This document shows, one piece after another, positions 8,382-44,103 of a stretch of DNA of 64,000 bases. How positions within the stretch are numbered: the stretch's first letter is position 1; every line of letters starts with the position of its first letter. Below the pieces are notes generated by a model. It saw only the letters and a list, made by a program, of their open reading frames with translations, was not told the origin of the DNA and did no database searches. The stretch is from Haliotis cracherodii (lineage: Eukaryota), in the NCBI RefSeq assembly GCF_022045235.1, contig NW_027266265.1:16988001-17052000 (forward strand). The letters are read 5' to 3'. The position numbers and the translations under genes were made by a program.

Positions 8382-10415
8382 ATGATGGAGAAACTGTTCT
8401 ATTTTCAAGCTCTCTTGTCCGGCACAGGGATGTCGTCCCGTTTAATCCTCATAATATTCAATTTGGCAATTCTAAGTGTCTTTAAACTATCATATGTCAT
8501 GTCGATTGGTGATTCGACAACTCATGTGAGACATGTGTCTATATTGGGAACAAGCCGACACCTGCCCACTGAGTGGGAGACAACGTGTAGGCAGGACTCT
8601 CATCTAAACTCCTCTTTTGTATCTATTTCGTGTACGGTGACAGTAGATGATGTATGGGATTTAAATCACTTCCGGAACTGGTCAGCCATATTGGATAATG
8701 ACACCCTTGTGTCTCTGGATGTAATGTGTGAAACTGGAGCCAGCGTCTGTCTCCCTTGGCCGTACCGAGCCAGACATCTGGACACACTGAAGATCAGGAA
8801 TTGCACCAACACGTGCTACTTCTCAGACTTCAACCAACCGGAAGTATTGGATATTCCTGACTCCCTGAGGGTGTTTGAAGGATATGGTGTGACTGAACAG
8901 GTTAACGTTATGGATATGTTGTCTGTCGACCTGAAGAGTCTCCCTCCTGCATTGGAGTGTGGACCGATGTCCTTAGAGGTATTCATCTACAGGAACACCA
9001 CGGCAGATTTTATATATCCAGAGGGATTCTTTCCAAAGGAAGGGGACTCCGTAACTGACGAGTTTGTACAAACGACGCGGGATATCAACAGTCTTGAACA
9101 TGTATGTCGCTATAGAAATATGAAGGTTTATGATTTGAGCCAAAGGACTGATGCCACGGGAGCCTTAATATATTCTACTTTCATCAACTCTCTATTTCCC
9201 CAGCTCAGAACACTAAACTTCTCAGACACAGAATTACAAGTTTATCCTTCAATTTTGGAAACATGGAGACTCCGCTTTGAGAAGCTGCAAACTTTGGACC
9301 TCTCTCATAATAATATCTCTCGTTTTGACTTGAGAGATATGAGTCTTATTTCTCAAGGTACTGGTCTAATAGACCTCAGGTATAATAGCATTCGCACTAT
9401 AGGCATCCAAGAAATAAATTCTTTTTCAAAAACAAAAGGCGCAGTAATTGACATAAGAAACAATCCTTTTAGATGTGATTGCGCTATGGCAAACTTTAGT
9501 GACTACCTCCAGAAGAATATAAAAAAAGATCAAGGTGAGAATATAAACATTAACTACAGCTATCTTTGGGACTTGAAATGTGTTTCCCCTCAAAGGTTTC
9601 GCGGAAAAGCGATCAGAAGCCTTTCAAAAGAGGTGTTGTGTTCCACGGATACGACTGCCTATGTCGCTCAGATAGCAGTCCTGTGTGTAATCGTAATCAT
9701 TTTGATAATCACTATTATTGTAACGACAAGATATAGGAAGGAGATAACCATTCTTGCTTTCACGCGTTTCAATATTCTTCTTCCATGTCAACCGATTGAA
9801 AACTCAAGCAATAAGACATACGACGCTTTTGTGGCCTACAGTCACCATGACACCACATGGGTTGTGAAAACTCTCCTCCCTCGACTAGAGAGTGGTTCCC
9901 CTGACGGAAATAACTTCCGGTTATGTCTTCACCAGCGAGACTTTGCAGTTGGCGCCGCTATAGCTGACAACATTTGTCAGAGCGTTGAGGCAAGCAGACA
10001 CACTATCCTGGTGTTGTCTAGGAAGTTTCTGGAGAGCGAGTGGTGTTTGATGGAGTTCCGCACTGCCTTCCACCAGAGTCTCATTGAGAAGAAGAAACAT
10101 CTGATTCTGGTCCTCCTTGAGGACATCCCCGTGAATGATCTTGACGCGGACTTTCGGCGTTGTATGCAGACATGGACGTACATTCACATCTCTGACAAAC
10201 TTTTTTGGGATAGAATCGTGTATTCGTTAACCGACAAAAGTAAACCAAAAAGGAAATCAATCGCTGCAAAAGACGAATGCTCTGACATACACAATCCACA
10301 GACCAGTGCAAGTGACTCTTTTGATCATGTCAACACCAACCTACCAGAACAATATGATCTTTGCCAGTATATTGAAAAGGAATCAAGGTCAGCTGACCAT
10401 ATCACTGATTTTTGA
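8382..10415 (+). CDS. Toll-like receptor A (short LRR ectodomain, TM, TIR); true start may be Met at 8430
   Basis: 677-aa ORF with a hydrophobic leader, LRRs (LQTLDLSHNNI, LIDLRYNSI), LRR-CT NPFRCDC...C...P...C, TM IAVLCVIVIILIITIIV, and TIR boxes YDAFVAYS / LCLHQRDFAVG / SEWC..EF / FWDRI. Confidence 0.95.
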   Translation: MMEKLFYFQALLSGTGMSSRLILIIFNLAILSVFKLSYVMSIGDSTTHVRHVSILGTSRHLPTEWETTCRQDSHLNSSFVSISCTVTVDDVWDLNHFRNWSAILDNDTLVSLDVMCETGASVCLPWPYRARHLDTLKIRNCTNTCYFSDFNQPEVLDIPDSLRVFEGYGVTEQVNVMDMLSVDLKSLPPALECGPMSLEVFIYRNTTADFIYPEGFFPKEGDSVTDEFVQTTRDINSLEHVCRYRNMKVYDLSQRTDATGALIYSTFINSLFPQLRTLNFSDTELQVYPSILETWRLRFEKLQTLDLSHNNISRFDLRDMSLISQGTGLIDLRYNSIRTIGIQEINSFSKTKGAVIDIRNNPFRCDCAMANFSDYLQKNIKKDQGENININYSYLWDLKCVSPQRFRGKAIRSLSKEVLCSTDTTAYVAQIAVLCVIVIILIITIIVTTRYRKEITILAFTRFNILLPCQPIENSSNKTYDAFVAYSHHDTTWVVKTLLPRLESGSPDGNNFRLCLHQRDFAVGAAIADNICQSVEASRHTILVLSRKFLESEWCLMEFRTAFHQSLIEKKKHLILVLLEDIPVNDLDADFRRCMQTWTYIHISDKLFWDRIVYSLTDKSKPKRKSIAAKDECSDIHNPQTSASDSFDHVNTNLPEQYDLCQYIEKESRSADHITDF

Positions 10416-10884
10416 TTCCACTGTTTGTACTTTCATATACTGAAAAGGACTGAGACTATAAGTAAACGCTTATGCTCTCTCTGTGTTGTCTCTTTAGTTG
10501 ATTTACGGGCTACTTTCAACGAACCAAGGATCATTAGTGGGAATTCAAGAATTATTATATTTGCTGAATAATAGAAATGTTTAGTATTTGATAAATTGTT
10601 TTTTTAATGTTTTCATTAAAGAAACAATTTCGTTGACGAGTTTTATGTATGATTAGCACGGAAGGTGGGTTTGCCCAGTTGCTTGATTCGGGTACATCGG
10701 TTACCCACATGCGTTTCATGTTGGGTTTGGATGTCATTTGGTGATTTGATGCTGAAAGCGGCATAAACCAAAACTCACTCACAATGAGTCATATTTGAGA
10801 AATTCTGATTTAACCCAAGTACCTTGCACCATCGAAAACATACATATATATGGAGTGTGAGATCGATTGTAACAATGTGACACT

Positions 10885-12090
10885 ACATACTTATAATATG
10901 CTTATGGTTATGATTTACTACATTGTTAGGATATACTACATGTTTATGACATCCTACATGGTTATGGTATACTACATGGTTATGGTATACGACATTGTTA
11001 TGGTATACTACATGGTTATGGTATACCACATGGTCATGGTATACTACATGGTCATGGTATACTACATTGTTAGGATATACTACATGGTCATGATATACTA
11101 CATGGTCATGGTATACTACATTGTTAGGATATACTACATGGTCATGATATACTACAAGGTTACGATAAACTACATGGTCATGGTATACTACATGGTTATG
11201 GTATACTACATTGTTAGGATATACCACATGGTTATGACATACTACAAGGTTACGATAAACTACATGGTCATGGTATACTACATGGTTATGGTATACTACA
11301 TTGTTATGATATACTACATGGTCATGATATACTACATGGTTATGACATACTACAAGGTTCCGATAAACTACATGGTCATGGTATACTACATAGTTATGGT
11401 ATACTACATTGTTAGGATATACTACATGGTTATGATATACTACATGGTTATGACATACTACAAGGTTACGATAAACTACATGGTCATGGTATACTACATG
11501 GTTATGGTATACTACATTGTTAGGATATACTACATGGTCATGATATACTACATGGTTATGATATACTACATGGTTATGACATACTACATGGTTATGATAA
11601 ACTACATGGTCATGGTATACTACATGGTTATGGTATACTACATTGTTAGGATATACTATATGGTCATGATATACTACATGGTCATGATATACTACATGGT
11701 TATGACATACTACAAGGTTACGATAAACTACAGGGTCATGGTATACTACATGGTTATGGTATACTACATTGTTAGGATATACTACATGGTTATGATATAC
11801 TACTTGGTTATGACATACTACAAGGTTACGATAAACTACATGGTCATGGTATACTACATGGTTATGGTATACTACATTGTTAGGATATACTACATGGTCA
11901 TGTTATACTACATGGTTATGGTATACTACATGGTCATGATATACTACATGGTCATGGTATACTACATGGTTATGATACACTACATTGTTAGGATATACTA
12001 CATGGTTATGGTATACTACATTGTTAGGATAAACTACATGGTTAAGATCCAGCACATGGCTATGGTATATTTCATGGTTGTGGTATTTTT
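10885..12090. repeat. 18-bp tandem repeat ATATACTACATGGTTATG (array 1)
   Basis: Direct periodicity; produces the (MVMVYY)n ORF 10850-12103. Confidence 0.95.
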
Positions 12091-14289: not shown

Positions 14290-15010
14290 CACAAACCGTA
14301 CGTCGTCGCATCAGATGTGCAGGGATTGTCACCAGAAGACCCACCAGACGTCCAATTTTGACAGGAAACCACCGTCAAGCACGTCTACAGTGGTGCCAAC
14401 AGCGTCTACGCTGGACGGCCATGCACTGGGGACAAGTTCTATTCACTGACGAGTCTCGTTTTCACCTCAGCCACAGCGATGGACGGATTCCAGTGTACCG
14501 ACGTCGAGGCGAATGTTACGTCAATCATTGTGTCATGGAAGAAGATCGGTTCGGGGGTGGTAGCGTTATGGTATGGGAAGGGATTACAGCAAGAGAGAGG
14601 ACCCGTTTGATAGTGGTAGAGGGAAATCTCAATGGACAGCGCAACCGCGACGAGATCATCGTCCCTGTTGTTCTACCGATTTTGCGTCCTCATGGCATTA
14701 CCTTTCAACGTGACAACGCCCGGCCTCATATTGCTCGACTTGTTCAGGATTCACTTCAACAAAACAACGTGAATGTCATCCCCTGGCCGGCTCGTTCCCC
14801 TGATCTCTCACCAATCGACCACATGTGAGATGAGATGGATCGGCGCCTTCGACGTCAACCACGTGTTCCACAGACACTCCAGGAACTTCGAAACATGCTC
14901 CAGCAGATATGGACAGATATCCCACAGGGCTTTGTGCGACGCCTGGCCCATTCCATGAGACGAAGATGAGTTGCTGGCATCGGAACCAGAGGTGGACACA
15001 CACGGTATTG
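14290..15010 (+). mobile_element. Degenerate Tc1/mariner transposase (pseudogene fragment)
   Basis: ORF 14358-14828 contains VLFTDESRF, GGGSVMVW, QRDNARPH and WPARSPDLSPID, followed by a stop. No N-terminus is visible. Confidence 0.9.
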
Positions 15011-22878: not shown

Positions 22879-24813
22879 ATGTCATCAGGAATATACTTCA
22901 GGTTTTGGACAATGGTTATGCTTGGTGTGTCATTAGTTGACACTGCATATGGTACAAAACTTATGCCTCTTAAACGTCCCCCCTCTCCTACGTTCAAGAG
23001 AAATATGATCATGCCAGATGAATGGAAGGCAATGTGCAAGACCTCAAGCGACAAAACCAACAAATCATTTATCTCCATATATTGTCATGTGAACGTTGAG
23101 GATGTGTGGGACTTTAATCACTTCCGGAACTGGTCAGTTGTGTTGGATAATGACACCCTAGTGTCGCTGGATATAGTTTGTGAGGATGGAGCAAGAATCT
23201 GTCTTCCCTGGCCGTACAGAGAGGGACATCTGCACACGTTGAGGGTTACCAGGTGCACCAATACTTGCTACTACTCGGACTTCAATCGACCGGAAGTGTT
23301 GGATATCCCAGACTCACTGAGGGTATTTGAAGGTTATGATGTGACAGAGGAGAGGAAACTACTGGATATGTTGTCCATTGACATAAAGAGTTTACCGGCT
23401 CCTATGGTATGTGGCCCAATGCATCTGGAAGTCTTCATCTACAGACACAAGCAGCTTAAAATCCTATTTGACGAAGACAGCGAAGATTACCCACAACTTG
23501 AGGACCTCAACATTACTGACACGATCACGAAGAACACGCGCAATATGGATGATCTTGGTTATGTATGCAAATATGAAAATATGAGAGTCTTTGATAAAAG
23601 TCAACGGATCCGGGCTTCGTCTCTCCTTATCTATTCAAGTGTAGTCAACTCACGATTCCCCCAACTTCGAATACTAAATTTCTCAGATACTGAGTTGCAA
23701 GTATTTCCCCCAATTCTGGCAGTCTGGCGGCGTCACTTCGACAAGCTGCAAATTTTGGACCTTTCTCATAATAACATCTCCCGTTTTGAATTAAGAGATA
23801 CGAGCCTTCTCTCTCAAGATGTTGGAATTATAGATCTCAGGTTTAATGATATACGTAAAATTGGAGAAAAGGAAATTGAATCTTTTTCAAAAGTTGACGG
23901 AGTTGTGATTAATGTGAGAGACAATCCCTTTCAGTGTGACTGTGCTATGGGAAACTTCAGCATGTATCTTCAAAAGTATAGCAGTACAACTGAAGCTGGT
24001 ATAAACAGGGATTATGCATATCTCTGGGACTTAGAATGCGTCACCCCAGAGAAGTTTCGAGGTAAAAGGATCAGCGAGTTCACACGGAAGATATTATGTT
24101 CCACCGATATGACAGCCTACATATCTCAAATATCAGCCATATGTGTAACTGTGGTCATTTTCTTGATTTTCGTGATACTTTGTGTTCGATATAGAAAGGA
24201 AATAAGAATTTTGACTTTTACACGCTGCAACATTATTCTACCATGTCAGTCATTTGAACACTCAAGCAATAAGACATACGATGCTTTTGTGGCCTACAGT
24301 CATATTGATTCAGCGTGGGTTGTGAAGACCCTCCTCCCTCGACTAGAGAGTGGTTCCCCTGACGGAAATAACTTCCGGTTATGTCTTCACCAGCGAGACT
24401 TTGCAGTTGGCGCCGCTATAGCTGACAACATTTGTCAGAGCGTTGAGGCAAGCAGACACACTATCCTGGTGTTGTCTAGGAAGTTTCTGGAGAGCGAGTG
24501 GTGTTTGATGGAGTTCCGCACCGCCTTCCACCAGAGTCTCATTGAGAAGAAGAAACATCTGATTCTGGTCCTCCTTGAGGACATCCCCGTGAGTGAACTT
24601 GACGCGGACTTTCGGCGTTGTATGCAGACATGGACGTACATTCACATATCTGACAAACTTTTTTGGGACAGAATCGTTTATTCATTAACCGACAAAAGTA
24701 AACCGAAAAAGAAGACCTCCATCGCAAAAGACGTACCCACGCCTGGAAACAATGCTGAGAACATCGACGTTAAGATCTGTAGAAAGCCCCCAGAACAGTA
24801 TGACCTTTGTTAA
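22879..24813 (+). CDS. Toll-like receptor B
   Basis: First ATG (MSSGIYF...) in ORF 22840-24813. Signal-like leader, LRRs, NPFQCDC LRR-CT, TM and TIR. Candidate upstream intron 22215-22689 (CAG|GTCAGT ... TTTTAG|). Confidence 0.95.
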   Translation: MSSGIYFRFWTMVMLGVSLVDTAYGTKLMPLKRPPSPTFKRNMIMPDEWKAMCKTSSDKTNKSFISIYCHVNVEDVWDFNHFRNWSVVLDNDTLVSLDIVCEDGARICLPWPYREGHLHTLRVTRCTNTCYYSDFNRPEVLDIPDSLRVFEGYDVTEERKLLDMLSIDIKSLPAPMVCGPMHLEVFIYRHKQLKILFDEDSEDYPQLEDLNITDTITKNTRNMDDLGYVCKYENMRVFDKSQRIRASSLLIYSSVVNSRFPQLRILNFSDTELQVFPPILAVWRRHFDKLQILDLSHNNISRFELRDTSLLSQDVGIIDLRFNDIRKIGEKEIESFSKVDGVVINVRDNPFQCDCAMGNFSMYLQKYSSTTEAGINRDYAYLWDLECVTPEKFRGKRISEFTRKILCSTDMTAYISQISAICVTVVIFLIFVILCVRYRKEIRILTFTRCNIILPCQSFEHSSNKTYDAFVAYSHIDSAWVVKTLLPRLESGSPDGNNFRLCLHQRDFAVGAAIADNICQSVEASRHTILVLSRKFLESEWCLMEFRTAFHQSLIEKKKHLILVLLEDIPVSELDADFRRCMQTWTYIHISDKLFWDRIVYSLTDKSKPKKKTSIAKDVPTPGNNAENIDVKICRKPPEQYDLC

Positions 24814-25061: not shown

Positions 25062-25340
25062 TCCAAGGACAAAGGGTCAGCGGATTTGTAACAATGTAAA
25101 AATAATATATTCGTTGATCACTATACATAGTTGTACAATATAAATGACTGTTATCATCACGATTATATTGGCCTTTGTGTGTCTTTAACGTTATCCCTAA
25201 TTGTCCAAGGACAAAGGGTCAGCGGATTTGTAGCAATGTAAAAATAATATATTCGTTGATCACTATACATAGTTGTACAATATAAATGACTGTTATCATC
25301 ACGATTATATTGGCATTTGTGTGTCTTTAACGTTATCCCT
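25062..25340. repeat. ~137-bp tandem duplication downstream of TLR-B (offset 142 bp)
   Basis: TCCAAGGACAAAGGGTCAGCGG...GTTATCCCT occurs twice. Confidence 0.9.
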
Positions 25341-30717: not shown

Positions 30718-30970
30718 GTGAGTGAGTGAGTTGGGTTTAACGCCGCTTTTAACAGTATTCCACTTATATCACGGCGTGTCAGCTTAATGTGGGAGGAAAG
30801 CCCGAAGTGATGCAGGTCTCAAACGTTTACCACTTCCGCGAAAACCACGAGCACGGGTATGGTGCTGACAAACCTAGAAACATAATCAGGGTGAACCGGG
30901 ATTCGAATCCACAATCATAGGTTTCTACCCATGGGACGCAACACTGCACAGCGAATTGCGTCTTAGACTA
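30718..30970 (-). mobile_element. SINE family B copy
   Basis: Reverse complement of most of 37220-37501. Confidence 0.8.
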
Positions 30971-31701: not shown

Positions 31702-31865
31702 NNNNNNNNNNNNNNNNNNNNNNNNNNNNNNNNNNNNNNNNNNNNNNNNNNNNNNNNNNNNNNNNNNNNNNNNNNNNNNNNNNNNNNNNNNNNNNNNNNN
31801 NNNNNNNNNNNNNNNNNNNNNNNNNNNNNNNNNNNNNNNNNNNNNNNNNNNNNNNNNNNNNNNNN
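31702..31865. other. Assembly gap (N run)
   Basis: Run of n characters. Confidence 0.99.
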
Positions 31866-31980
31866 CAGACTCACACAAACAATCACGCACACATATAAAC
31901 ACTCACACACACAATCATACGCACATATACACACTCACACACAAAAACACTTTCACACGCAATCACATACACAAACACAT

Positions 31981-32951
31981 ACACGTACACTCAACATTGT
32001 CAAGAGATACTGAAAAGAAATTAATACTTGTTCAGTGACGGGCGGTGTTTCTATGCCTTAGAAAACATCTACATAGTAGATGTTATTTAACAGTCCAACT
32101 GAAGCAAGAAGTGAATTGCTGCTGTGCAGTACTAACTGCCGTGTCATATCCGTATACATATAGGGAAACCTACTGACGGTGTTAACAGTTTTGAATCAAA
32201 TAACACAATTAATAGTATTTAACTTTATTAGATAAGGATTTTAACCACATATGGATAAAACGTTCATCTTCAAGTAAACATAGTATGATATTTGTTTTGA
32301 AAAATGCGCATTTTCTTATTTCCCTATATTTCTAACGTACAGCCACGTGCAAGTTATGCCCCCATGAAAAACACGAAGTCACACGGGGTAACAATGCAGC
32401 AACATCATAGATGAATGAATGTAATTATGTTTGCGTTAAGCAATACAGGATCGATTTTAAAATCGGGAATAATTAAATTTTGTATGATATAACGACGTGT
32501 GACTTTTAGTCCATTAGTCTCGGCTGAATTGTTTTATATTACAACTTCAAATATATCCTAAAATGACCCCTTATACACAACAGTACCCAGTGCCCAGCGC
32601 AAAGAATGTCATGCCTACAGAGATCCTTAAGTAAAGGTCATCTGTATTCTGCATCTCAAGTCACCATGCCCCAGTTCTTGGCGATGTGAGCTTTACATCA
32701 ACTTTGTTTCATTATTTATTATTTCCTTTCTTTACAAAGACATGTTGTCTTTTTTCGAACGCAGGATCTGCCCCGACAATGCTACAATCAATTCACTATG
32801 GACTGATGTTGGCATGCAATGCAATGCTTAACAATTTTATTTTTATACAGTTTAGAGTGCACGAGTGGCCCAGTCGTCAAAGGCGCTGCGATTCGTTGTG
32901 AAGAGTTGCGTCCCTTAGGCGTGCCAGAAACCTAAGATGATGGGTTCGAGT
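31981..32951 (+). repeat. Arm 1 of an inverted segmental duplication (partner 40625-41505)
   Basis: Reverse-complement match by eye; ORFs 32686-32901(+) and 40674-40889(-) are homologous. Confidence 0.9.
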
Positions 32952-33827: not shown

Positions 33828-34189
33828 TAGGTGCCACTGCCCAAGCAAGCATAGCACCAGGATGATCGCAAGGCGATGTTACGTTCATCTTAGCACTATG
33901 ATCCCTGTGTACAAGTGGACCATGTGGGAGAATGGGGTCTCATTATACAGTTTAAAGGTTGTGGAGCGGTCAGTATATTTATGTGATGTAACTGCCTTGA
34001 GCTGCTACAGACAAGCATGTTCTTATGGTGTCCGAGAGGGTACATCGTTTTATTCACTTTAATTTTGGTCGCGAGAAAACGATAAAGCGAAACGAGAAAG
34101 TGTCATATGCTCTAAAGACAATAAGCCTGAATCTGGCTTGCGCTCTTGTTTTCAATGCCAGGGGAATGGTGTGCTTTTGAATCACCCTC

Positions 34190-36364: not shown

Positions 36365-37702
36365 GTATGTGTTGTCCATATTGTATCACAACTTATAGAC
36401 TAAGCAACTATGTACTGGAATGAATGACATTTCATTTAGCGTTATGTCATGTTTGGCATTTACAGAATGACCTACGAACTACGTAGAATAACGGATTATC
36501 TGTCCCGAGAGAATTATTTTTGGAAGTTACAAACATTGGCGTAAATCAAAATCATGTTCATAATAACCAAGTTCTGTTGGTTCTCATCGAAACATGTTTT
36601 ATAAAGATACATACATTGTCTTTTACATAGGAACTGATTTCGCAAATATCAAATATTAATTGCTGAACATGCATATCCTTTAACCATTAAAATATGCCAT
36701 TTCACTGGCTTGGAAAATATTCACTATACGGTCAACATATTACAAAAGGGAAAATACTTATATCCAACAGACCAATGTAATGAGCTGAATAAATCCGTAA
36801 AATCTCGACGTATGCTAAATGAATATATGTGTCAGATGCCATGAAAGAGTTCTGTAGGTAGTTCCCAAGACTCAGCTTCAATCTTCGGAAGATAATACAG
36901 TTATCAAAATATTATTGTACGAGGGTTGATTGTTAAGTTTTAAGAATTAAATAAAAGTGAAATCGTTTGTCGAGGACATTACATAATGTCATTAATCTGA
37001 GGTGTATCCACACGAGCTTGAGTCAACTGGGCATATAGTTTCTCCGTGACAAGTCAGTAAAATAAATAAGTGCTCACGGTTTTGTAGCCTTTGGAAAATG
37101 GACAAACTTGAGGAACGTGCAAAGGTTTTCACTATTGCGAAATTCATTCTATTTGACGCTTAGAACTACCAACCATCCCTTGTACGTACAATTTTCCTTT
37201 AGAACTTCATTGAGCTTCAGGGGACACGGGTGGCCTAGTCGTCTAAGGCGCCGCGATTCGCTGTGCAGAGTTGCGTCCCTTGGGCACGCCAGAAACCTAT
37301 GATTGTGGGTTCGAATCCCGGTTCTCCCTGATTATATTTCTAGGTTTGTCAGCACCATACCCGTTCTCGTGGGTTTCACCAAAGCGGTAAACGTCTGAGA
37401 CCTGCATCACTTCGGGCTTTCCTCCCACATTAAGCTGACACGCCGTGATATGACTGGAACAATGTTAAAAGCGGCGTTAAACCCAACACACTCACTCACT
37501 CATTGAGCCTCAGGGGCATTGAACTCTATTCCTTAGAAAATTCTAAAATAGAAGTTGTTTGATCAAGGTTACAACATTCAAGGCCTCATAAGGCTTTCAA
37601 AGCGTTTGAACACACACTACTCCAGCTATATGACGGCGGTCTGTAAATAGTTTTGTTTTTGTTTGTTATTAATATACTGTCATGTTTATTTAATATTTTT
37701 AG
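36365..37702 (+). other. Probable 5'-UTR intron of TLR-C
   Basis: GAG|GTATGT donor (same as TLR-A) and TTTTTAG|ATAT acceptor. Confidence 0.5.
37220..37501 (+). mobile_element. SINE family B, full length, tRNA-Leu-like head
   Basis: TGGCCTAGTCGTCTAAGGCGC...GTGGGTTCGAATCCC, (CACT)n tail, TSD TCATTGAGC(T/C)TCAGGGG. Confidence 0.85.
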
Positions 37703-37752
37703 ATATCCTTCCATAAAAGAGGCGTTTGCTGCTGTGAGGACAGGTGTCAGCG

Positions 37753-39393
37753 ATGTCGATCCATTCCTTCCATTTACTCTTCATTGTTTTAGTGACACAC
37801 TCAACCAGTGGATATCCGAACAGTAGTATCCCTTTGGAGTGGTCAAACATTTGTCAATCCGCCATTAACCTTTCAAACGTAGTCATTTCCTGTCACGTGG
37901 GTGTTGACGATACATGGGATTTAGATCACTTCCGGAACTGGTCAGCCCTATTGGATAATGACACTCTTGTGTCTCTGGACGTAATGTGTGAAACTGGAGC
38001 CAGTATCTGTCTCCCTTGGCCGTACCGAGCCAGACATCTGGACACTTTGAAGATCAGGAATTGCATCAACACTTACTCCTTCTTTGACTTCCACCGACGG
38101 GAAGTGCTGGATATCCCTGACTCCCTGAGGGTGTTTGAAGGATATGGTATGACGGAACAGTTTAACGTTATGAATGTTTGGGTGTGTGGACAGAAGTCCT
38201 TAGAGGTATTCATCTACAGGAACACCAAGGTAGATTTGAAAAACAAAATTTACCTATTCGCAGGTTCCTATAGAAATTTGAAGGTCATCGATATTAGTCA
38301 AGAACCAAAAACATCTATGGGCGCGCAAATTGACCGTCTTTCAATTTTTGTTTGGATGCCTCAACTTAGAAATTTGAATATGTCAGGCATAGGATTGCAG
38401 GTGTATCCATCGATGTTGAAACCGTGGAGAACCTCATTTCCCAAACTAGAAATTGTGGACCTCTCCCACAACAATATTTCCCATTTTGACATAGAGATAA
38501 CGTCTCCTTCCCAAGATGATGTTGGCCTTATAGATCTACGGTTTAACAATATACAGACCATAGGCGTCCATGAAATAATCTCCTTTTCACATTATAAAAG
38601 AGTTTTTATTGACATGAGAGGCAACCCATTTAGATGTGATTGTGCTATGGCAAACTTGAATGACTTTCTTCAGAAAAACACCAACAAAGACTTAAGTAAT
38701 ATGAACTATCTTTACGATTTGAAATGTGTTACCCCTCAAAGGTTTCGAGGAAAAGCGATCAGAGACCTTTCAAAAGAGTTGTTGTGTTCCACGGATACGA
38801 CTGCCTATGTCGCTCAGATATCAGTCCTGTGTGTTATCGTTATCATTTTGATAATCACTATTATTGTAACGACAAGATATAGGAAGGAGATAACCATTCT
38901 TGCTTTCACGCGTTTCAATATTCTTCTTCCATCTCAACCGATCGGAAAGTCAAGCAATAAGACATACGATGCTTTTGTGGCCTACAGTCACCATGACACC
39001 GAATGGGTTGTGAAAACCCTTCTCCCTCGACTAGAGAGTGGATCCCCTGACGGAAATAACTTCCGGTTATGTCTTCACCAGCGAGACTTTGCAGTTGGCG
39101 CCGCTATAGCTGACAACATTTGTCAGAGCGTTGAGGCAAGCAGACACACTATCCTGGTGTTGTCTCGGAAGTTTCTGGAGAGCGAGTGGTGTTTGATGGA
39201 GTTCCGCACTGCCTTCCACCAGAGTCTCATTGAGAAGAAGAAACATCTGATTCTGGTCCTCCTTGAGGACATCCCCGTGAGTGAACTTGACGCGGACTTT
39301 CGGCGTTGTATGCAGACAAGGACGTACATTCACATCTCTGACAAACTTTTTTGGGACAGAATCGTTTATTCATTAACCGACAAAAGTAATTAA
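37753..39393 (+). CDS. Toll-like receptor C (shortened ectodomain, no post-TIR tail)
   Basis: ATG at 37753 (MSIHSFHLLFIVLV signal), LRRs, GNPFRCDC, TM nearly identical to TLR-A, and a complete TIR ending SLTDKSN*. Confidence 0.93.
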   Translation: MSIHSFHLLFIVLVTHSTSGYPNSSIPLEWSNICQSAINLSNVVISCHVGVDDTWDLDHFRNWSALLDNDTLVSLDVMCETGASICLPWPYRARHLDTLKIRNCINTYSFFDFHRREVLDIPDSLRVFEGYGMTEQFNVMNVWVCGQKSLEVFIYRNTKVDLKNKIYLFAGSYRNLKVIDISQEPKTSMGAQIDRLSIFVWMPQLRNLNMSGIGLQVYPSMLKPWRTSFPKLEIVDLSHNNISHFDIEITSPSQDDVGLIDLRFNNIQTIGVHEIISFSHYKRVFIDMRGNPFRCDCAMANLNDFLQKNTNKDLSNMNYLYDLKCVTPQRFRGKAIRDLSKELLCSTDTTAYVAQISVLCVIVIILIITIIVTTRYRKEITILAFTRFNILLPSQPIGKSSNKTYDAFVAYSHHDTEWVVKTLLPRLESGSPDGNNFRLCLHQRDFAVGAAIADNICQSVEASRHTILVLSRKFLESEWCLMEFRTAFHQSLIEKKKHLILVLLEDIPVSELDADFRRCMQTRTYIHISDKLFWDRIVYSLTDKSN

Positions 39394-39739
39394 GTAATTG
39401 AAGCATTGACCTATGGTTTGGAAGACATTTGGACCAAGATAACATGACGTGGATGTATAGGTTATTCATCTTTATTGAACCATTTTCTTTTCATACAAAA
39501 TTACTCAGCCACAGATTACTTTTCACAAAAAGTTGCAGGAAAGAGTTAATGGCTTTTTACAAACCGTTGCAGGAAAGAGTTAATGGTTTAAAGTACATAA
39601 TCAAATTTCCCAACAGTTTCATTTAAAAATTACATGGTAGACCATATTTTTGCCCCTCTGTATATATTTACAAAATTAAACCCCCATCTGCATCAAGTAA
39701 CTGTAATTACTATTCGATGCTGCAAATGAAGGTAAAAAA

Positions 39740-40040
39740 GAAATTAGGATAAGCTAAGCACGTTTTCGATTTTCATCGTATGATTTTTGAATTGAAAAAG
39801 GAAGATATAAATATTAAAAGAGTACAGAGAATTTCTTTGTCATTTATTTGCAGTCGAAGATGAGTATCACTTGCATGTGCAGCTTTCACAACGTTAATAA
39901 ATGGAAACATCGAATAAAGTATCCATAAATAAATGTCCATCCAAAATTAAATAACTTGCCATCTTTGTTAAGTAGTTTAAACCAAGATACACTGCAGAAT
40001 ATATCAGTGTTTATTCATTATGCAATGTTACATCGAAACA
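39740..40040 (+). mobile_element. Highly decayed LINE 3' remnant
   Basis: Fragments ARFRFSS..IEKGRY and VEDEYH, typical of LINE ORF2 C-termini. Confidence 0.4.
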
Positions 40041-40535
40041 ATATTACATTTCAGTAAATATACGTCACTAGACACGTGAAGGACATTTTCAAATTTGACG
40101 TATCAGTGACAAAAATGGTGACCAATGCAATTCCCTCTTTTGTTTTTCAGGTGAACAATTGACTTGCCTTTGGGTGTGTTTATGATGGGTGCTACCGGTT
40201 GGGCAGGATAATTTATTATGCTCACCTTTTCGCGAACGCCTGGTATCATCACTATTTAAATGGTGATTCATAAAAACAAGCTCAAGATACGGAATCGTAC
40301 AATGGATTTTTGGCTGAGAGTCCTTATTATTATGGAAAGTGTTTTGTCGCTTTTATTCATTGAATAACAGCAAGGAATTGTGAAGACAGGGATGCAGACT
40401 GGACCTGCTTGTAAAATGAAGTGGTATATGAATAATTGTACTGAAGTTTGACGACAGGGTAGATGGATATAGGGTTTACCCGTGTGTGAGATGGAATGGT
40501 GAGATGGAGTGGTGTGTGAGAAAAAACGTAGGTGA

Positions 40536-40537
<2 letters not shown>

Positions 40538-40624
<87 letters not shown>
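40538..40624. repeat. (GA)n microsatellite
   Basis: Directly visible. Confidence 0.97.
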
Positions 40625-40626
<2 letters not shown>

Positions 40627-41502
40627 TCGAACCCATCATCTTAGGTTTCTGCACGCCTAAGGGACGCAACTCTTCACAACGAATCGTAGCGCCTTTGACG
40701 ACTGGGCCTCTCGTGCACTCTAAACTGTTTAAAAATAACATTGTTATGCATTGCATTGCATGCCAACATCAGTCCACGGTTAATTGATTGTAGCATTGTC
40801 GGGGCAGATCCTGCGTTCGGAAAAAGACAATATGTCTTTGTATAAAACGGAAATAATAAATAATGAAACAAAGTTAATGTAAAGCTCACAACGCCAAGAA
40901 CTGGGGCATGATGACTTGAGATGCAGAATACAGATGACCTTTACTTAAGGATCTCTGTAGGCATGACATTCTTTGCGCTGGGCACTGGGTACTGTCGTGA
41001 ACAATTCAGCCGAGACTCATGGACTAATAGTCACACGTCGTTATATCATACAAAATGTATTTATTCCCGATTTAAAATCGATCCTGTATTGCTTAACGCA
41101 AACATGTATTACATTCCGTCATCTATGATGTCGCTGCATTGTTACCCCGTGTGAGTTCATGTTTTTCATGGGGGCATAACTTGCACGTGGCTGTACGTTA
41201 GAAATATAGAGAAGTAAGAAAATGCGTGTGACTAAAATATGTGGTTAAAATCCTTATCTAATAAAGTTAAATACTATTAATTGTTATATTTGATTCAAAA
41301 CTGTTAACACCGTCAGTAGGTTTCCCTATATGTATACGGATATGACACGGCAGTTAGTATTGCACAGCAGCAATTCATTTCTTATTTCAGTTGGACTATT
41401 AGATAACGTCTACACGATGTTTTATAAGGCCTAGAAACACCGCCCGTCACTGAATAAGTATTAATTTCTTTTCAGTATCTCTTGACAATGTTGTGTTTAC
41501 GT

Positions 41503-41505
<3 letters not shown>
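40625..41505 (-). repeat. Arm 2 of the inverted segmental duplication
   Basis: Reverse complement of 31981-32951 with internal deletions; both ends abut (GA)n tracts. Confidence 0.9.
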
Positions 41506-41579
<74 letters not shown>

Positions 41580-41580
41580 G
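41505..41580. repeat. (GA)n microsatellite
   Basis: Directly visible. Confidence 0.97.
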
Positions 41581-42164
41581 CCTTGGTTCATTGCCATGCC
41601 TGGATATGTACAGTGCATCGTGTTCTTAGCTCACGTGGTGTCGGTAGATAAGCGATAACGATACGAAGAGTTAAAATAATTTGTATTGTGTTAACCATTT
41701 GGTGTAGGTAGATTAGCGCATTCCCGAACACTCTCGATTAACGCTGAAAGTGAAGCTGAAAACTGTTCAGACAAATGACGATAAGAAAAGTTAAAATAAA
41801 TTGAGCGAATAGGCAGATCATATTATATATCGGATTAAACGATTCGGATAGTTTCTTTTTTGATGGATGTGAATATCTAATGAACTAAGAAAATATCCGT
41901 GACTTGATAGGATCGATTTTAGAATTTAGATTTCCCAATTTGCTAAGAAAGAGAAGACCCCAATATTTGGGCCCCAACAGTATGTGAAAGCCATTTCAGG
42001 AGACGAAGTTAATTCAGAGAGAATTATAGCAACACATTCCTGCCACACCCCACACCCCTTCCCACACCCAACAAAACACCAATTAAATGTCACATAAAAT
42101 ATAAAACACAGAAAATGTACAGCTGTTTTTCATACCTGACATATCCTATAATAAGTCTGAACAA

Positions 42165-42404
42165 AACTGCCTGACAAAAGGAAGTATACACCATGCATAT
42201 GTTTGATGTTGGCTAAGATGAAATAAAAGAGAAATGGTTATTCGACGCCGATGCATTTGATAAGCTTAATGGTATCATTGTTGTGTTTTGGACCGTAGGT
42301 TTGCAGTAATTCGGAGACTGTCTTAGGCCTAGTAATGTTTCAAAACATTTGTCATTCTTTAAACAATCCATTTTCAAGTGTATACTTGCTTTTCCCCGGC
42401 AGTT
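42165..42404. mobile_element. Tc1-type MITE, same family as 15316-15543
   Basis: AACTGCCTGACAAAAGGAAGTATACA ... TGTATACTTGCTTTTCCCCGGCAGTT, with a similar interior. Confidence 0.7.
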
Positions 42405-42546
42405 TAAGTCTCAGGAGCTAACAGTGTGTGTTTTAACTGAATATTTCCTCTTGTTACAACAGTGAATATACAAGCTTACAAATAGTTTCAACTATTCCAG
42501 TGAATAGTAGATGTGTGCTTACACCTATAAGCATTGAACATATATT

Positions 42547-42703
42547 GGGCGCGTGGTTAAAGCATTGGCTCGTCATGCCGAAGACCCGGGTTTGATTTCT
42601 CCACATGGGTTCAATGTGTGAAGCCCATTTTCCGGTGTCCCCTGCGTTATATTGCTGGAATATTGCATTAAGCGGAGTAAAACCATACTAACTCACTCAC
42701 TCA
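42547..42703 (+). mobile_element. SINE family A copy just beyond the TLR-D stop codon
   Basis: GTGGTTAAAGC...GCCGAAGACCCGGGTT...ACTCACTCACTC. Confidence 0.8.
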
Positions 42704-42720
42704 AAATATATCGATATTTT

Positions 42721-44103
42721 CTAGAGTTTCTCCTGGGTAGATTTTGAGGATTCGTCTTTGTGTCGTCCATCATTGATGTTTTGTTCGTTGATGGGGGACC
42801 GGCCACACAGGATTCGGCAGCTTCGGGAGATGAGCAATTTAACGTTCTCTCTGTAAAGGATGCTTAATAAGAGTGAAGCGACCAAAATGACAACAACAAC
42901 AGCTAAAACAGCGACGAAGGCTTGGTAGGACGCCACATCCACGACATCAAGGTTGCAAAGCGCTTTCCTTGAGAATTGACTAATTTGTTTTCCTCTTTTA
43001 CTGACTGGATCAACGCACGTGAGATCCCAAAGATATTCGTAGTCAAGACTCAGACCTGCATCTTCTGGCGTCGGATGTCTTCTGAGAAAGTTACTGAAGT
43101 CGGCCATAGCGCAGTCGCATCTCAGGGGATTTTGTCTCACGTCCACAACTTGTGCAACGGAAGACTGAAACGATCCGATCTCGGCCTCTTTTATTGTTTG
43201 AATGGAGTTGTACGTTAAGTTGATAACTCTGATTGGTGCGTCAAAACTTTGAACACCCCCTCTGAGGTCAAAACGGGAGATGTTATTATGGGACAGATCC
43301 AAAATTTGTAGTTTTTCAATGCGTCCTTTCCATGATAATAAAATAGAAGGGAACGCCTGTATCTCCGTGGAAGAGTAGTTTAGTGTTGTCAGGTTGGGGA
43401 AGCGAGAGTTGATGAAAGTGGCGTATATACCTGCAGACGATGAGTCTTGTCTCTGACTCGCGTCATAGACCTTCATATTTCTATAGTTACACACGTGTTT
43501 AAGTTTGTTTATATCCCGCGCTGTTTGTACGAAATTGTTAGTAACCTCGTCTTCCCCTTTCGGCACAAAACTTTTGGGGTAAATTATGTCAGCCTTGGTG
43601 TTCCTGTAGATGAATACCTCTAAGGACATCGGTCCACACTCCAATGCAGGAGGGAGACTCTTCAGGTCGACAGACAACATATCCATAACGTTAAACTGTT
43701 CAGTCACACCATATCCTTCAAACACCCTCAGGGAGTCAGGGATATCCAGCACTTCCCGTCGGTGGAAGTTCGAGAAGAAGCACGTGTTGATGCAATTCCT
43801 GATCTTCAAAGTGTCCAGATGTCTGGCTCGGTACGGCCAGGGGAGACAGGCACTGGCTCCAGTTTCACACATAACATCCAGAGACACAAGGGTGTCATTA
43901 TCCAATAGGGCTGACCAGTTCCGGAAGTGATCTAAATCCCATGTATCGTCAACACCCACGTGACAGGAAATGACTACGTTTGAAAGGTTAATGGCGGATT
44001 GACAAATGTTTGACCACTCCAAAGGGATACTACTGTTCGGATATCCACTGGTTGTATGCGTCACTAAAACAATGAAGAGCAAATGGAAGGAATGGATCGA
44101 CAT
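42721..44103 (-). CDS. TIR-less TLR paralog D (LRR ectodomain, TM, ~44-aa tail)
   Basis: Intact 460-aa ORF from ATG 44103. N-terminus nearly identical to TLR-C, LQILDLSHNNI, QNPLRCDC LRR-CT, TM AFVAVLAVVVVILVASLLLSILY, no TIR. Acceptor TTTTCAG|ATAT at 44177. Confidence 0.88.
   Translation of the reverse strand: MSIHSFHLLFIVLVTHTTSGYPNSSIPLEWSNICQSAINLSNVVISCHVGVDDTWDLDHFRNWSALLDNDTLVSLDVMCETGASACLPWPYRARHLDTLKIRNCINTCFFSNFHRREVLDIPDSLRVFEGYGVTEQFNVMDMLSVDLKSLPPALECGPMSLEVFIYRNTKADIIYPKSFVPKGEDEVTNNFVQTARDINKLKHVCNYRNMKVYDASQRQDSSSAGIYATFINSRFPNLTTLNYSSTEIQAFPSILLSWKGRIEKLQILDLSHNNISRFDLRGGVQSFDAPIRVINLTYNSIQTIKEAEIGSFQSSVAQVVDVRQNPLRCDCAMADFSNFLRRHPTPEDAGLSLDYEYLWDLTCVDPVSKRGKQISQFSRKALCNLDVVDVASYQAFVAVLAVVVVILVASLLLSILYRENVKLLISRSCRILCGRSPINEQNINDGRHKDESSKSTQEKL

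What the first reader, a model, noticed from the sequence alone, without database searches (positions are those of the whole stretch)
8382..44103. Four-gene TLR cluster built as a patchwork of interchangeable blocks
Seen: nearest-neighbour relationships change along the genes. TLR-C shares its signal and N-terminus with TLR-D (MSIHSFHLL...SCHVGVDDTW). It shares its LRR-CT end, TM and juxtamembrane region with TLR-A (CSTDTTAYVAQI.VLCVIVIILIITIIVTTRYRKEITILAFTRFNILLP). It shares the 3' end of its TIR with TLR-B (GTGAGTGAACTT; GACAGAATCGTTTATTCATTA). TLR-D shares a 145-bp block (43596-43740) with TLR-A (8856-9000) with one mismatch, although the genes are ~35 kb apart and inverted. The central LRR cores differ in all four. 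Inference: recurrent interlocus gene conversion is recombining receptor modules, giving a combinatorial way to diversify innate receptors.
Basis: partly seen in the sequence, partly recalled or inferred. Interest (0 to 1): 0.78.

Follow-up and report, generated by a model that had tools for sequence, protein, structure and literature searches.

The report
Abalone TLR cluster shaped by gene conversion
Four neighbouring Toll-like receptor genes of an abalone have repeatedly copied short stretches onto one another, which keeps their end modules alike while their central ligand-binding parts stay different, much as is known for TLR1 and TLR6 of mammals.

Summary
The window is from a Haliotis genome. 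It holds three intronless TLRs: A 8382-10415, B 22879-24813 and C 37753-39393. It also holds D (42721-44103, minus strand), a conserved paralog with no TIR domain. Nearest-neighbour relations switch along the genes. C and D match at 333 of 345 nt at the 5' end. A and D match at 144 of 145 nt in one block. A and C match at 248 of 261 nt over LRRCT-TM. A, B and C match at 362-365 of 371 nt in the TIR. The central cores are only 49-66% identical. Synonymous divergence is 0-0.14 in the shared tracts and saturated in the cores (Fisher p 1e-14 to 1e-24). No other close paralog exists in the genome. Proteins of H. rufescens, H. asinina and H. rubra show A and D grouping by species lineage in the N-terminal block (AU p 5e-6 and 1e-7). 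In the core they group by gene type. The best reading is recurrent interlocus gene conversion, that is, concerted evolution. The N gap (31702-31865) is intergenic. This is a new member of a known kind, like TLR1/TLR6 conversion. Limits: no ortholog DNA, no junction-spanning reads, no RNA evidence.

The parts
8382..10415 (+). TLR-A. Single ORF of 677 aa: signal-like N-terminus, LRR ectodomain, TM, TIR and a C-terminal tail.
   Evidence: ORF. Pfam TIR scores 70.3 bits against a cut-off of 21.3. The AF2 model has mean pLDDT 76. Foldseek matches TLR1/2/6/10 TIR domains and LRR solenoids. Hydrophobic windows lie at residues 16-42 and 422-452. The H. rufescens ortholog P0072 is 96% identical.
22879..24813 (+). 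TLR-B. 644 aa counted from the ATG at 22879, with the same architecture as A.
   Evidence: TIR 65.1 bits. Orthologs are P0073 (H. rufescens), P0077 (H. asinina) and P0006 (H. rubra, a broken model).
37753..39393 (+). TLR-C. A chimeric 546-aa TLR: D-type 5' end, its own fast-evolving core with deletions of 11 and 24 aa, A-type LRRCT-TM-JM, the shared TIR and no C-terminal tail.
   Evidence: The core's best match in the genome is A, at 63% aa. Its branch in the core tree is 2.37 changes per column. No ortholog appeared in the protein searches. The core contig is present in 2 of 2 organism-A runs.
42721..44103 (-). TLR-D. A 460-aa paralog with LRR ectodomain and TM but no TIR. It is inverted relative to A-C and tail-to-tail with C.
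   Evidence: No TIR by Pfam, by tblastn or by a lax tblastn of both flanks (best E 0.078 and 0.22 on 28-39 aa). The same short cytoplasmic tail and stop are found in H. rufescens P0007 and H. asinina P0008.
37621..38230 (+). The 5' tract of C shared with D (D 44265-43593): about 135 bp upstream, the signal peptide and the N-terminal cap.
   Evidence: blastn. Identity 333/345 nt in the coding part. dS 0.09-0.12 against a saturated core. Quartet-informative sites AB|CD 23:1:0 in this segment.
43593..44265 (-). The 5' tract of D shared with C.
8856..9000 (+). The block of A that is nearly identical to D 43596-43740 (A residues 159-207).
   Evidence: 1 mismatch in 145. 0 of 29 synonymous sites differ.
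43596..43740 (-). The block of D that is nearly identical to A 8856-9000.
9573..9833 (+). The LRRCT-TM-juxtamembrane tract of A shared with C 38719-38979.
   Evidence: 248/261 nt identical, with a 91-nt perfect run. dS 0.13 against 2.1 in the core. A-type plus C form a clade at 96/96.
38719..38979 (+). The LRRCT-TM-juxtamembrane tract of C shared with A.
9873..10243 (+). The homogenised TIR tract, copy in A.
   Evidence: A-B 364/371 and A-C 362/371 identical. A and B share perfect runs of 191, 70 and 50 nt.
24331..24701 (+). The homogenised TIR tract, copy in B.
   Evidence: B-C 365/371 identical.
39019..39389 (+). The homogenised TIR tract, copy in C.
   Evidence: The Logan contig at 39043-39335/39356 has depth 84 and 66, against 23-34 for most single-copy neighbours, in 2 runs.
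31702..31865 (.). Assembly gap (N) in the B-C intergenic region.
   Evidence: Not filled.
31980..32951 (+). Locus-specific duplicate, inverted with respect to 40625-41505. It abuts the low-complexity sequence just right of the gap.
   Evidence: 85-86% identity. Only 2 of the 41 genome matches are full length, and both lie in this window.
40625..41505 (-). Second copy of that duplicate, lying between C and D.

Best explanation
The locus is a small Haliotis-specific family: three signalling TLRs (A, B, C) and one TIR-less LRR-TM paralog (D). The A, B and D types are old. They predate the split of the H. asinina/H. rubra lineage from the lineage of the window species and H. rufescens.

Short non-reciprocal copying events between the genes (interlocus gene conversion) have repeatedly overwritten stretches of roughly 100 to 700 bp:
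- the 5' end and N-terminal cap, among D, C and A;
- the LRRCT-TM-juxtamembrane region, between A and C;
- the TIR, among A, B and C.

Exchange needs local sequence similarity, and selection tolerates it only where the paralogs do the same job. It therefore persists in the conserved end modules. It has stopped, or is removed by selection, in the central LRR core. The net effect is concerted evolution of the cap, membrane and signalling modules beside four distinct recognition cores.

Shown here: the mosaic, the loss of synonymous divergence in the tracts, the incongruence between segments, and the recurrence in different species lineages. Inferred: that the events are non-crossover conversions. 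A-D and C-D are inverted pairs, and a single crossover between them would invert the interval. Also inferred: that selection for shared partners (adaptor binding by the TIR, possibly pairing through the cap) helps keep the converted versions.
For: 1. SYNONYMOUS DIVERGENCE.
- A-B: dS 0.14 in the TIR, against 0.78 to about 2.3 in the four ectodomain and TM segments S2-S5 and 1.6 in the tail.
- A-D: 0 of 29 synonymous sites differ in the block, against a saturated core.
- A-C: dS 0.13 in LRRCT-TM, against 2.1 in the core.
- C-D: dS 0.09-0.12, against a saturated core.
- Fisher p is 6e-18, 2e-14, 2e-23 and 3e-24 respectively.

2. QUARTET-INFORMATIVE SITES (120 in all) cluster by position.
- AB|CD 23:1:0 in the first segment.
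- AC|BD 29 against 4 and 1 in LRRCT-TM.
- 17:18:17 in the core.
- There are 51 adjacent pattern changes, against a shuffled mean of 75 (p = 2e-5).

3. LONGEST RUNS. The test on the longest run of polymorphic sites without a difference gives p = 1e-4, the floor of 10,000 shuffles, for AC, AD and CD. Longest stretches with at most 1 mismatch are 262, 238, 167, 145 and 178 nt (p = 2e-4, the floor of 5000 shuffles).

4. NO HIDDEN DONOR. In the own-genome search (67 matches; 66 of 227 candidates scored) the next paralogs are 34% and 32% identical. The core of C has no closer relative than A, at 63%.

5. ORTHOLOG TREES.
- In the N-terminal block, monophyly of the A type and of the D type is rejected (p-AU 4.8e-6 and 1.1e-7).
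- H. asinina A and D are sisters there (92/93).
- In the core and in LRRCT-TM the D type is 100/100. The B type is 100/100 in the core.

6. TIR ACROSS SPECIES.
- The window's B is 97% identical to the window's A but 94% to H. asinina B.
- One residue of a TIR motif is C in all five TIRs of the window species and H. rufescens, and V in all three full-length TIRs of H. asinina and H. rubra.
- H. rufescens B carries the A-type motif HHDTTW where the window's B keeps the B-type HIDSAW. The tract border therefore differs between sister species.

7. INDEPENDENT READS. In 2 of 2 organism-A runs from different studies, the core of C is a contig with 1 and 0 differences. The TIR contig has about 2.5-2.8 times the depth of most single-copy neighbours, and it starts at a site that distinguishes the paralogs.

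8. GC3 is 0.51-0.61 in the converted segments S2, S3 and TIR, against 0.36-0.39 in the cores of A-C and 0.48 in D's. This fits GC-biased conversion but is only a hint.
Against: - All cross-species evidence is therefore at protein level, and no tract could be dated or polarised.
- Logan contigs break at the block borders, so no read-level record bridges a junction. The tool itself warns that contig depth is not a copy number.
- In the A-B-C-only run test on polymorphic sites, A-B (p = 0.14) and B-C (p = 0.81) were not significant. The TIR has too few polymorphic sites, so the TIR case rests on dS and on cross-species residues.
- In the four-sequence version of that test, the A-B and B-C runs ride on spurious alignment of D inside the TIR and should be ignored.
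- The AU tests were run after I had seen the identity matrices, so they are post hoc.
- The TIR is also under strong purifying selection: 92-100% aa identity between the 8 full-length TIRs compared. This accounts for part of its similarity.
- The GC3 contrast could equally reflect codon usage.
Confidence: 0.85

Rival explanations
1. Combinatorial diversification. The cluster is a module-shuffling system whose function is to generate new receptor specificities, possibly also somatically.
For: C is a real three-source chimera. Tract borders differ between sister species, so exchange is ongoing.
Against: The recognition cores are never exchanged: 17:18:17 quartet sites and 49-66% identity. All tracts homogenise. 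Only four donors exist in the genome. Tract ends fall inside domains. No somatic data exist.
Confidence: 0.05
2. Assembly or polishing artefact. The paralogous blocks were collapsed, or short-read polishing copied one paralog's letters onto another.
For: The cluster contains an assembly gap. No bridging read was seen.
Against: - Identical runs are short (191 nt at most) and interspersed with private differences.
- The same pattern is seen in proteins from independent assemblies of H. rufescens and H. asinina.
- Contigs from 2 independent organism-A runs reproduce the core of C, and they break at the assembly's own paralog-specific sites. The TIR contig has about 2.5-2.8 times the depth of most single-copy neighbours.
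Confidence: 0.03
3. Constraint only. The shared blocks are similar because of extreme purifying selection, including at the nucleotide level, with no exchange between the genes.
For: The TIR is 92-100% identical in protein between the 8 full-length TIRs compared. The N-terminal block is the most conserved part of the ectodomain in all paralogs.
Against: - Constraint cannot make paralogs of one species closer than orthologs.
- It cannot produce switching quartet topologies.
- It cannot bring dS to 0-0.14 beside dS above 1.
- The C-D similarity continues into non-coding DNA upstream of the ATG.
Confidence: 0.02
4. Partial duplication or unequal exchange made C. On this reading C was built once as a chimera from a D-like 5' part and an A-like 3' part, rather than being an old gene overwritten at both ends. 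This does not exclude conversion elsewhere in the cluster.
For: - No C-type protein was found in three other Haliotis species.
- The core of C (38400-38599) was not found at 90% likeness or more in one run each of two related organisms.
- A locus-specific inverted duplicate flanks C.
Against: The core of C is saturated at synonymous sites against all three others and has no closer relative anywhere in the genome. It is therefore old, or came from a lost donor. A-C identity rises in steps towards the 3' end, from 57% to 99%, as overlapping tracts of different age would give. The tool states that a hole in contig coverage proves nothing.
Confidence: 0.2

Closest known systems
Gene conversion between tandem TLR1 and TLR6 of mammals (Kruithof et al. 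2007, PMC2077338; I read the abstract and outline only)
   Same: Both involve tandem TLR paralogs. In both, a C-terminal region (last LRRs, C-terminal cap, TM and most of the TIR) is more alike between paralogs than between orthologs, through independent conversion events in each species. In both, the N-terminal or central recognition part follows orthology. The authors conclude that conversion limits divergence of functional regions, which is what I conclude here.
   Different: - This is a mollusc family not orthologous to TLR1/6. By Foldseek the TIR is 34-37% identical to human TLR1, TLR2 and TLR6 TIR domains and 28% to TLR10.
- Three signalling genes plus a TIR-less one take part.
- A second, separate conversion zone exists at the N-terminal cap.
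- Two of the exchanging pairs are in inverted orientation.
- One member (C) is a chimera with a fast-evolving core.
Gene conversion in the vertebrate TLR1 family, including avian TLR1A/B and TLR2A/B (Huang et al. 2011, PMC3125219; I read the abstract and section headings only)
   Same: A small TLR family whose history combines duplication, several conversion events and selection.
   Different: A different phylum and a different family. I did not read their tract maps, so I make no closer comparison.
TIR-less TLR relatives that act as decoys or co-receptors, such as mammalian RP105/CD180 and soluble TLR5 of fish (recalled; no call supports this)
   Same: D has a TLR-type ectodomain and TM but no TIR. 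This form is conserved in 3 of 3 Haliotis species in which a D-type protein was found.
   Different: No function is known for D. Its partnership with A-C is inferred only from linkage and from the shared N-terminal block.
Somatic or combinatorial receptor diversifiers: lamprey VLR cassette copying (recalled) and snail FREPs (PMC2935394; search listing only)
   Same: LRR or other recognition modules are copied between genomic units.
   Different: In those systems the variable recognition modules are assembled from many donor cassettes, somatically. Here there are four genes, the variable cores are not exchanged, and no somatic evidence exists.

Membership tests
Toll-like receptor (LRR ectodomain + TM + TIR) | Cytoplasmic TIR domain | tested here: met
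   A, B and C score 70.3, 65.1 and 69.2 bits on Pfam PF01582, against a cut-off of 21.3. Foldseek matches the model of A to TLR1/2/6/10 TIR crystal structures (TM-score normalised by target length 0.72-0.78). D does NOT meet this feature. D is therefore a TLR-related LRR-TM protein and not a TLR in the strict sense.
Toll-like receptor (LRR ectodomain + TM + TIR) | Leucine-rich-repeat solenoid ectodomain | tested here: met
   All Pfam LRR hits are below the curated cut-offs (LRR_4 at 20.3-23.7 bits and LRR_8 at 17.7-21.3 bits against 27; LRR_1 in B at 16.5 against 20.6), so sequence alone is inconclusive. The AF2 model of A has block-mean pLDDT of 72-96 over residues 61-210. Its ectodomain aligns over about 360-400 columns to LRR solenoids such as TLR8, 5T4, LRG1 and NGL-3, at E 3e-7 to 2e-5. 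Only A was modelled.
Toll-like receptor (LRR ectodomain + TM + TIR) | Single transmembrane helix between ectodomain and TIR | tested here: met
   Each of A-D has one hydropathy peak above 3.1 in a 19-residue window. The model of A has a helix at residues 424-450.
Interlocus gene conversion / concerted evolution of TLR paralogs (TLR1/TLR6 type) | In a defined segment, paralogs within a species are closer than orthologs between species | tested here: met
   N-terminal block: the window's A and D are 89% and 97% identical, and H. asinina A and D 92% and 92%, against 78% and 86% for the window's A versus H. asinina A. Monophyly of the A type and of the D type is rejected. TIR: the window's B is 97% identical to the window's A and 94% to H. 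asinina B. All of this is at protein level only.
Interlocus gene conversion / concerted evolution of TLR paralogs (TLR1/TLR6 type) | Synonymous divergence drops inside the tract relative to the flanks | tested here: met
   dS is 0-0.14 inside the tracts and from 0.6 to saturation outside them. Fisher p is 1e-14 to 1e-24.
Interlocus gene conversion / concerted evolution of TLR paralogs (TLR1/TLR6 type) | Independent events in different lineages | tested here: met
   In the N-terminal block, A and D group separately within the H. asinina/H. rubra lineage (97/97) and within the lineage of the window species and H. rufescens. The TIR tract border differs between the window species and H. rufescens.
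Interlocus gene conversion / concerted evolution of TLR paralogs (TLR1/TLR6 type) | Non-reciprocal transfer with an identifiable donor and acceptor | not testable with these tools
Combinatorial or somatic receptor diversification system | The variable recognition modules are the units exchanged | tested here: not met
   No tract lies in the core. Quartet-informative sites there split 17:18:17 and identity is 49-66%.
Combinatorial or somatic receptor diversification system | A large pool of donor cassettes | tested here: not met
   Only the four window genes are close paralogs. The next best match is 34% identical.
Combinatorial or somatic receptor diversification system | Somatic variants absent from the germ line | not tested
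   No tissue-resolved long reads were available. The single read-laying run gave contigs only.

The most novel reading that the evidence does not exclude
The N-terminal cap of the TIR-less protein D and of the signalling receptor A (and C) is kept identical by selection on recurrent conversion, because D pairs physically with these receptors as a decoy or co-receptor. On this reading the cluster is a co-evolving receptor and regulator unit. Conversion acts as the mechanism that keeps the interface matched in each abalone lineage, and C is a newly made receptor wired to D's promoter and signal peptide.
Probability: 0.15. Interest if true: 0.6.

Novelty: new member of a known kind. Interest (0 to 1): 0.4.

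Why it matters
The locus shows, in a mollusc, the same evolutionary rule described for mammalian TLR1/TLR6. Conversion holds the signalling and membrane-proximal modules of tandem TLRs together while the recognition parts diverge.

It adds two less usual features. One is a second homogenised zone at the N-terminal cap, shared with a conserved TIR-less paralog in inverted orientation. The other is a chimeric fourth gene.

There are practical consequences for abalone immunogenetics. Trees built from the TIR or the N-terminal block of these genes will mis-assign orthology. Short-read variant calls in these blocks will mix paralogs.

My four topic searches found no paper on gene conversion in Haliotis or other mollusc TLRs:
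-, 20 of 99 hits listed;
-, 3 hits;
-, 6 hits, 4 listed;
-, 9 hits.

None was on the topic by title or abstract. Subscription journals and supplements were not searched.

Tried and rejected
I worked with ortholog proteins instead.
- The run test on polymorphic sites was misleading for A-B and B-C in the four-sequence version, because D is spuriously aligned inside the TIR. It was non-significant in the A-B-C version (p = 0.14 and 0.81). For the TIR I replaced it with synonymous-site contrasts and an all-site stretch permutation.
- In that all-site permutation B-D also gave p = 0.003, for a stretch of only 26 nt. I read this as a conserved motif and not as a tract. The all-site test does not correct for uneven constraint.
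- Monophyly of the A type was neither recovered nor clearly rejected in the core (p-AU 0.075) or in LRRCT-TM (p-AU 0.054). The cause is that C nests with or beside the A type.
- I looked for a lost TIR exon of D in 39394-42720 and 44113-48000 and found none.
- I looked for a closer donor of C's core elsewhere in the genome and found none.
- I asked whether the 881-bp repeat flanking C is a transposon family. Only its first ~100 bp are dispersed. The full length occurs twice, both times in this window. The order of the copies does not fit a simple inverted duplication of gene plus flank. The gap next to one copy prevents a reconstruction.
- Reads. No run on record as RNA holds the stretch, so expression is unknown. 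Logan contigs do not bridge block borders. Runs X10-X13, guessed to be RNA, hold 43-62% of a mostly intergenic stretch and are more likely DNA. I did not lay them.
- I opened no supplementary files. Tract maps in the supplements of PMC2077338 and PMC3125219 might refine the comparison.
- The two searches of earlier findings gave three first-reader notes on this window and nothing by words.

Full report
WHAT THE LOCUS IS

The window is G000:C2:16988001-17052000 of a 1.18-Gb genome in 80 contigs. The nearest named proteins are all from Haliotis. H. rufescens P0072 is 96% identical to protein A. The H. asinina and H. rubra proteins are 79% identical. The window therefore comes from an abalone close to H. 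rufescens. The genome itself is unnamed.

Four uninterrupted ORFs carry the family:
- A, 8382-10415 (+), 677 aa.
- B, 22879-24813 (+), 644 aa.
- C, 37753-39393 (+), 546 aa.
- D, 42721-44103 (-), 460 aa.

A, B and C pass the Pfam TIR cut-off, at 65-70 bits against 21.3. Their LRR hits are below the curated cut-offs. An AlphaFold2 model of A was built from a 39-sequence alignment and has mean pLDDT 76.3. By Foldseek its C-terminal domain matches the TIR domains of human TLR1, TLR2, TLR6 and TLR10. Its ectodomain matches LRR solenoids such as TLR8, 5T4 and LRG1. Each protein has one strong hydrophobic segment before the cytoplasmic part.

D has no TIR. Pfam finds none. tblastn with A finds none anywhere in the window (4 of 4 hits are the four genes, and the hit on D ends at A residue 472). 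A lax tblastn of both flanks of D gives only 28-39-residue matches, at E 0.078 and 0.22. The D-type proteins of H. rufescens and H. asinina end with the same short tail. The TIR-less form is therefore conserved and is not a local truncation.

THE GAP

The N run at 31702-31865 is 6.9 kb downstream of B and 5.9 kb upstream of C. Its left flank is unique sequence. Its right flank is about 110 bp of CA-rich low complexity. The only ORFs across it are runs of X. No gene of the cluster is affected. The join between the A-B half and the C-D half is a scaffold statement that I could not test and did not try to fill.

THE OBSERVATION

I made a protein-guided codon alignment and scanned it in 90-nt windows. 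Over the tracts defined from that scan:

| Pair | Region | Identity |
|---|---|---|
| C-D | 5' end | 333/345 |
| A-D | 145-bp block | 144/145 |
| A-C | LRRCT-TM-juxtamembrane | 248/261 |
| A-B | TIR tract | 364/371 |
| B-C | TIR tract | 365/371 |
| A-C | TIR tract | 362/371 |
| all six pairs | central core and beyond | 48.7-66.2% |

Perfect runs reach 191 nt for A-B, 123 nt for A-C and B-C, 99 nt for A-D and 86 nt for C-D.

In alignment columns 1787-1895, 5 of the 7 sites where one of A, B and C stands alone separate A from B=C. The post hoc p is 0.014.

Homology among A, B and C stops at the end of the TIR. A and B alone keep a weakly similar tail. C and D alone share about 135 bp upstream of the ATG, with indels.

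IS IT MORE THAN CONSTRAINT OR CHANCE?

Nei-Gojobori estimates by segment:

| Pair | In the tract | Elsewhere |
|---|---|---|
| A-B | dS 0.14 (TIR) | 0.78, 2.3, 2.0 and 1.3 in the four ectodomain/TM segments; 1.6 in the tail |
| A-D | 0 of 29 synonymous sites changed (block) | pS 0.75 (core) |
| A-C | dS 0.13 (LRRCT-TM) | 2.1 (core) |
| C-D | dS 0.09-0.12 (5' end) | pS 0.82 (core) |

Fisher tests on synonymous counts give p from 2e-14 to 3e-24.

The 120 quartet-informative sites are strongly ordered along the alignment:
- AB|CD 23:1:0 in the first segment.
- AC|BD 29 against 4 and 1 in LRRCT-TM.
- 17:18:17 in the core.
- There are 51 changes of pattern between neighbouring sites, against a mean of 75 in 100,000 shuffles (p = 2e-5).

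Uneven constraint cannot produce switching topologies.

NO HIDDEN DONOR

A six-frame search of the whole genome with A gave 67 matches at E of 1e-10 or less (66 of 227 candidates scored). After the four window genes, the best matches are 34% and 32% identical. The core of C finds A (63%), B (51%), D (44%) and then 33%.

OTHER SPECIES (PROTEINS ONLY)

The database holds these orthologs:

| Type | H. rufescens | H. asinina | H. rubra |
|---|---|---|---|
| A | P0072 | P0002 | P0003 |
| B | P0073 | P0077 | P0006 (broken model) |
| D | P0007 | P0008 | none found |
| C | none found | none found | none found |

Segment-wise identities and maximum-likelihood trees show two patterns.

The core and LRRCT-TM follow gene type:
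- D type 100/100 in both segments.
- B type 100/100 in the core and 59/70 in LRRCT-TM.
- A type plus C 96/96 in LRRCT-TM.

The N-terminal block follows species lineage:
- H. asinina A and D are sisters (92/93), inside a starred clade with H. rubra A (97/97).
- The window's A, C and D and H. rufescens A and D form the rest.
- Holding the A type or the D type together costs 49 and 54 log-likelihood units (p-AU 4.8e-6 and 1.1e-7).

I named these groups from whole-gene similarity but had already seen the identity matrices, so the tests are post hoc.

In the TIR, the window's B is closer to the window's A (97%) than to H. asinina B (94%). One residue of a TIR motif is C in all five TIRs of the window species and H. 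rufescens, and V in the three full-length TIRs of H. asinina and H. rubra. H. rufescens B has the A-type HHDTTW where the window's B keeps HIDSAW, close to the HMDSEW of H. asinina and H. rubra B. The 5' border of the TIR tract therefore differs between sister species, which means events after their split.

READS

One search found 24 runs, none on record as RNA. I laid the Logan contigs of two organism-A runs from different studies (X1, X6) and of two related organisms (X14, X15) on 37400-43399, at 90% likeness.

- In both organism-A runs, the unique core of C is one contig (38201-38795 and 38201-38809) with 1 and 0 differences. Its depth is 34 and 24, like most neighbouring single-copy contigs (most at 23-34).
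- The TIR contig (39043-39335 and 39043-39356) has depth 84 and 66. It starts right after a C-specific site of the assembly.
- This is what three identical genomic copies would give. The tool warns, however, that contig depth is not a copy number.
- Contigs end at the block borders, so none bridges a junction.
- In the related organisms, bin 38400-38599 has depth 0. The 3' part of D is present at about 98%, with a 6-nt deletion at 43254 that matches the two residues missing in H. rufescens D.
- This fits the lack of a C-type protein elsewhere, but a hole in contig coverage proves nothing.

INTERPRETATION

The mosaic is real and is best explained by recurrent interlocus gene conversion. I count at least five separate tracts in the window:
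- C-D at the 5' end.
- The A-D block.
- A-C over LRRCT-TM.
- The A-B-C TIR tract.
- A B-C sub-tract at the 3' end of the TIR.

At least two further events occurred in other lineages. A-D and C-D are inverted pairs. A single crossover between them would invert the interval, so short internal tracts flanked by diverged sequence indicate non-crossover conversion. This step is inferred.

The effect is homogenisation and not diversification:
- Every tract lies in a module that is conserved in all paralogs.
- The divergent core is untouched.
- Tract ends fall inside domains. The A-B tract begins at A residue 498, about 20 residues into the TIR.
- There are only four possible donors.

GC3 is 0.51-0.61 in the most converted segments, against 0.36-0.39 in the cores of A-C and 0.48 in D's. 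That agrees with GC-biased conversion but has other possible causes.

C is the one real new combination. Its core sits on a very long branch (2.37 changes per column). It carries deletions of 11 and 24 residues, the longer one over a low-confidence loop and a helix of the model of A. It is saturated at synonymous sites against all the others. I therefore read C as an old A-like paralog whose two ends were overwritten. A one-step chimeric origin is not excluded.

KNOWN PRECEDENT

Kruithof et al. 2007 (PMC2077338; abstract and outline read) describe the same pattern for tandem TLR1 and TLR6 in nine mammals. Independent conversions cover LRR16-19, the C-terminal cap, the TM and most of the TIR, and limit divergence of functional regions. 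Huang et al. 2011 (PMC3125219; abstract and headings read) report multiple conversion events in the vertebrate TLR1 family.

Four searches for the same thing in Haliotis, molluscs or sea urchins returned no paper on the topic by title or abstract:
-, 99 hits, 20 listed;
-, 3 hits;
-, 6 hits, 4 listed;
-, 9 hits.

The finding is a new member of a known kind. It has two less usual features: a second conversion zone shared with a TIR-less, inverted paralog, and a chimeric gene.

LIMITS

- There was no ortholog DNA, so tracts could not be dated or polarised.
- No read spans a block junction, and there was no RNA evidence.
- The scaffold join at the gap is untested.
- Only A was modelled.
- No supplements were opened.

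Noticed in passing
window 31980-32951 and 40625-41505: A locus-specific inverted duplicate of about 880-970 bp at 85-86% identity brackets gene C. One copy starts about 115 bp right of the N gap. Only its first ~100 bp belong to a dispersed repeat; the full length occurs only twice in the genome (2 of 41 matches). The order of the copies (downstream of D, upstream of C) does not fit a simple mirror duplication. It hints at an older D-like copy position near the gap.
   Followed up: partly
window 42721-44103 (-): The TIR-less paralog D is conserved, with the same short cytoplasmic tail, in H. rufescens and H. asinina. It is a candidate decoy or co-receptor.
   Followed up: partly
window 2059-6724: A 28-bp tandem repeat with 166 copies at 87% matches. 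It produces long spurious ORFs of 424-776 aa just upstream of gene A.
   Followed up: partly
window 10882-12079, 17978-19594, 21115-21276: Three arrays of the same 18-bp tandem repeat lie between A and B. The ORFs read through them (417 aa and 204 aa) are artefacts.
   Followed up: partly
window 34188-36158: A 59-bp tandem repeat with 33 copies at 93% matches, lying 1.6 kb upstream of C.
   Followed up: no
window 59734-62667 (+): A 977-aa ORF with endonuclease and reverse-transcriptase domains (RVT_1 at 92 bits): a LINE element.
   Followed up: no
window 14358-14828 and 20407-20856 (+): Two ORFs of about 150 aa lie between A and B. By eye they resemble the C-terminal part of Tc1/mariner-type transposases. 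They were not scanned against any family library.
   Followed up: no
window 37219-37496 and 44904-45180: A highly repeated short element lies upstream of both C and D in the same gene-relative orientation, at 91.7% identity. Contig depth there runs into the millions, and other copies lie at 30718-30960 and 54796-55049. I could not tell whether it belongs to the C-D shared tract.
   Followed up: partly
G000:C3:13258517-13324046: A tandem array of at least six TLR-like copies, at spacings of about 10.5 to 22 kb, each with 2-3 in-frame TAA stops in the region matched by protein A. It looks like an array of recently duplicated broken TLR genes.
   Followed up: no
window 7824-8057 and 25062-25344: Two two-copy tandem duplications, of 119 bp and 142 bp at 97-98% matches. 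One lies 0.3 kb upstream of A and the other 0.25 kb downstream of B.
   Followed up: no
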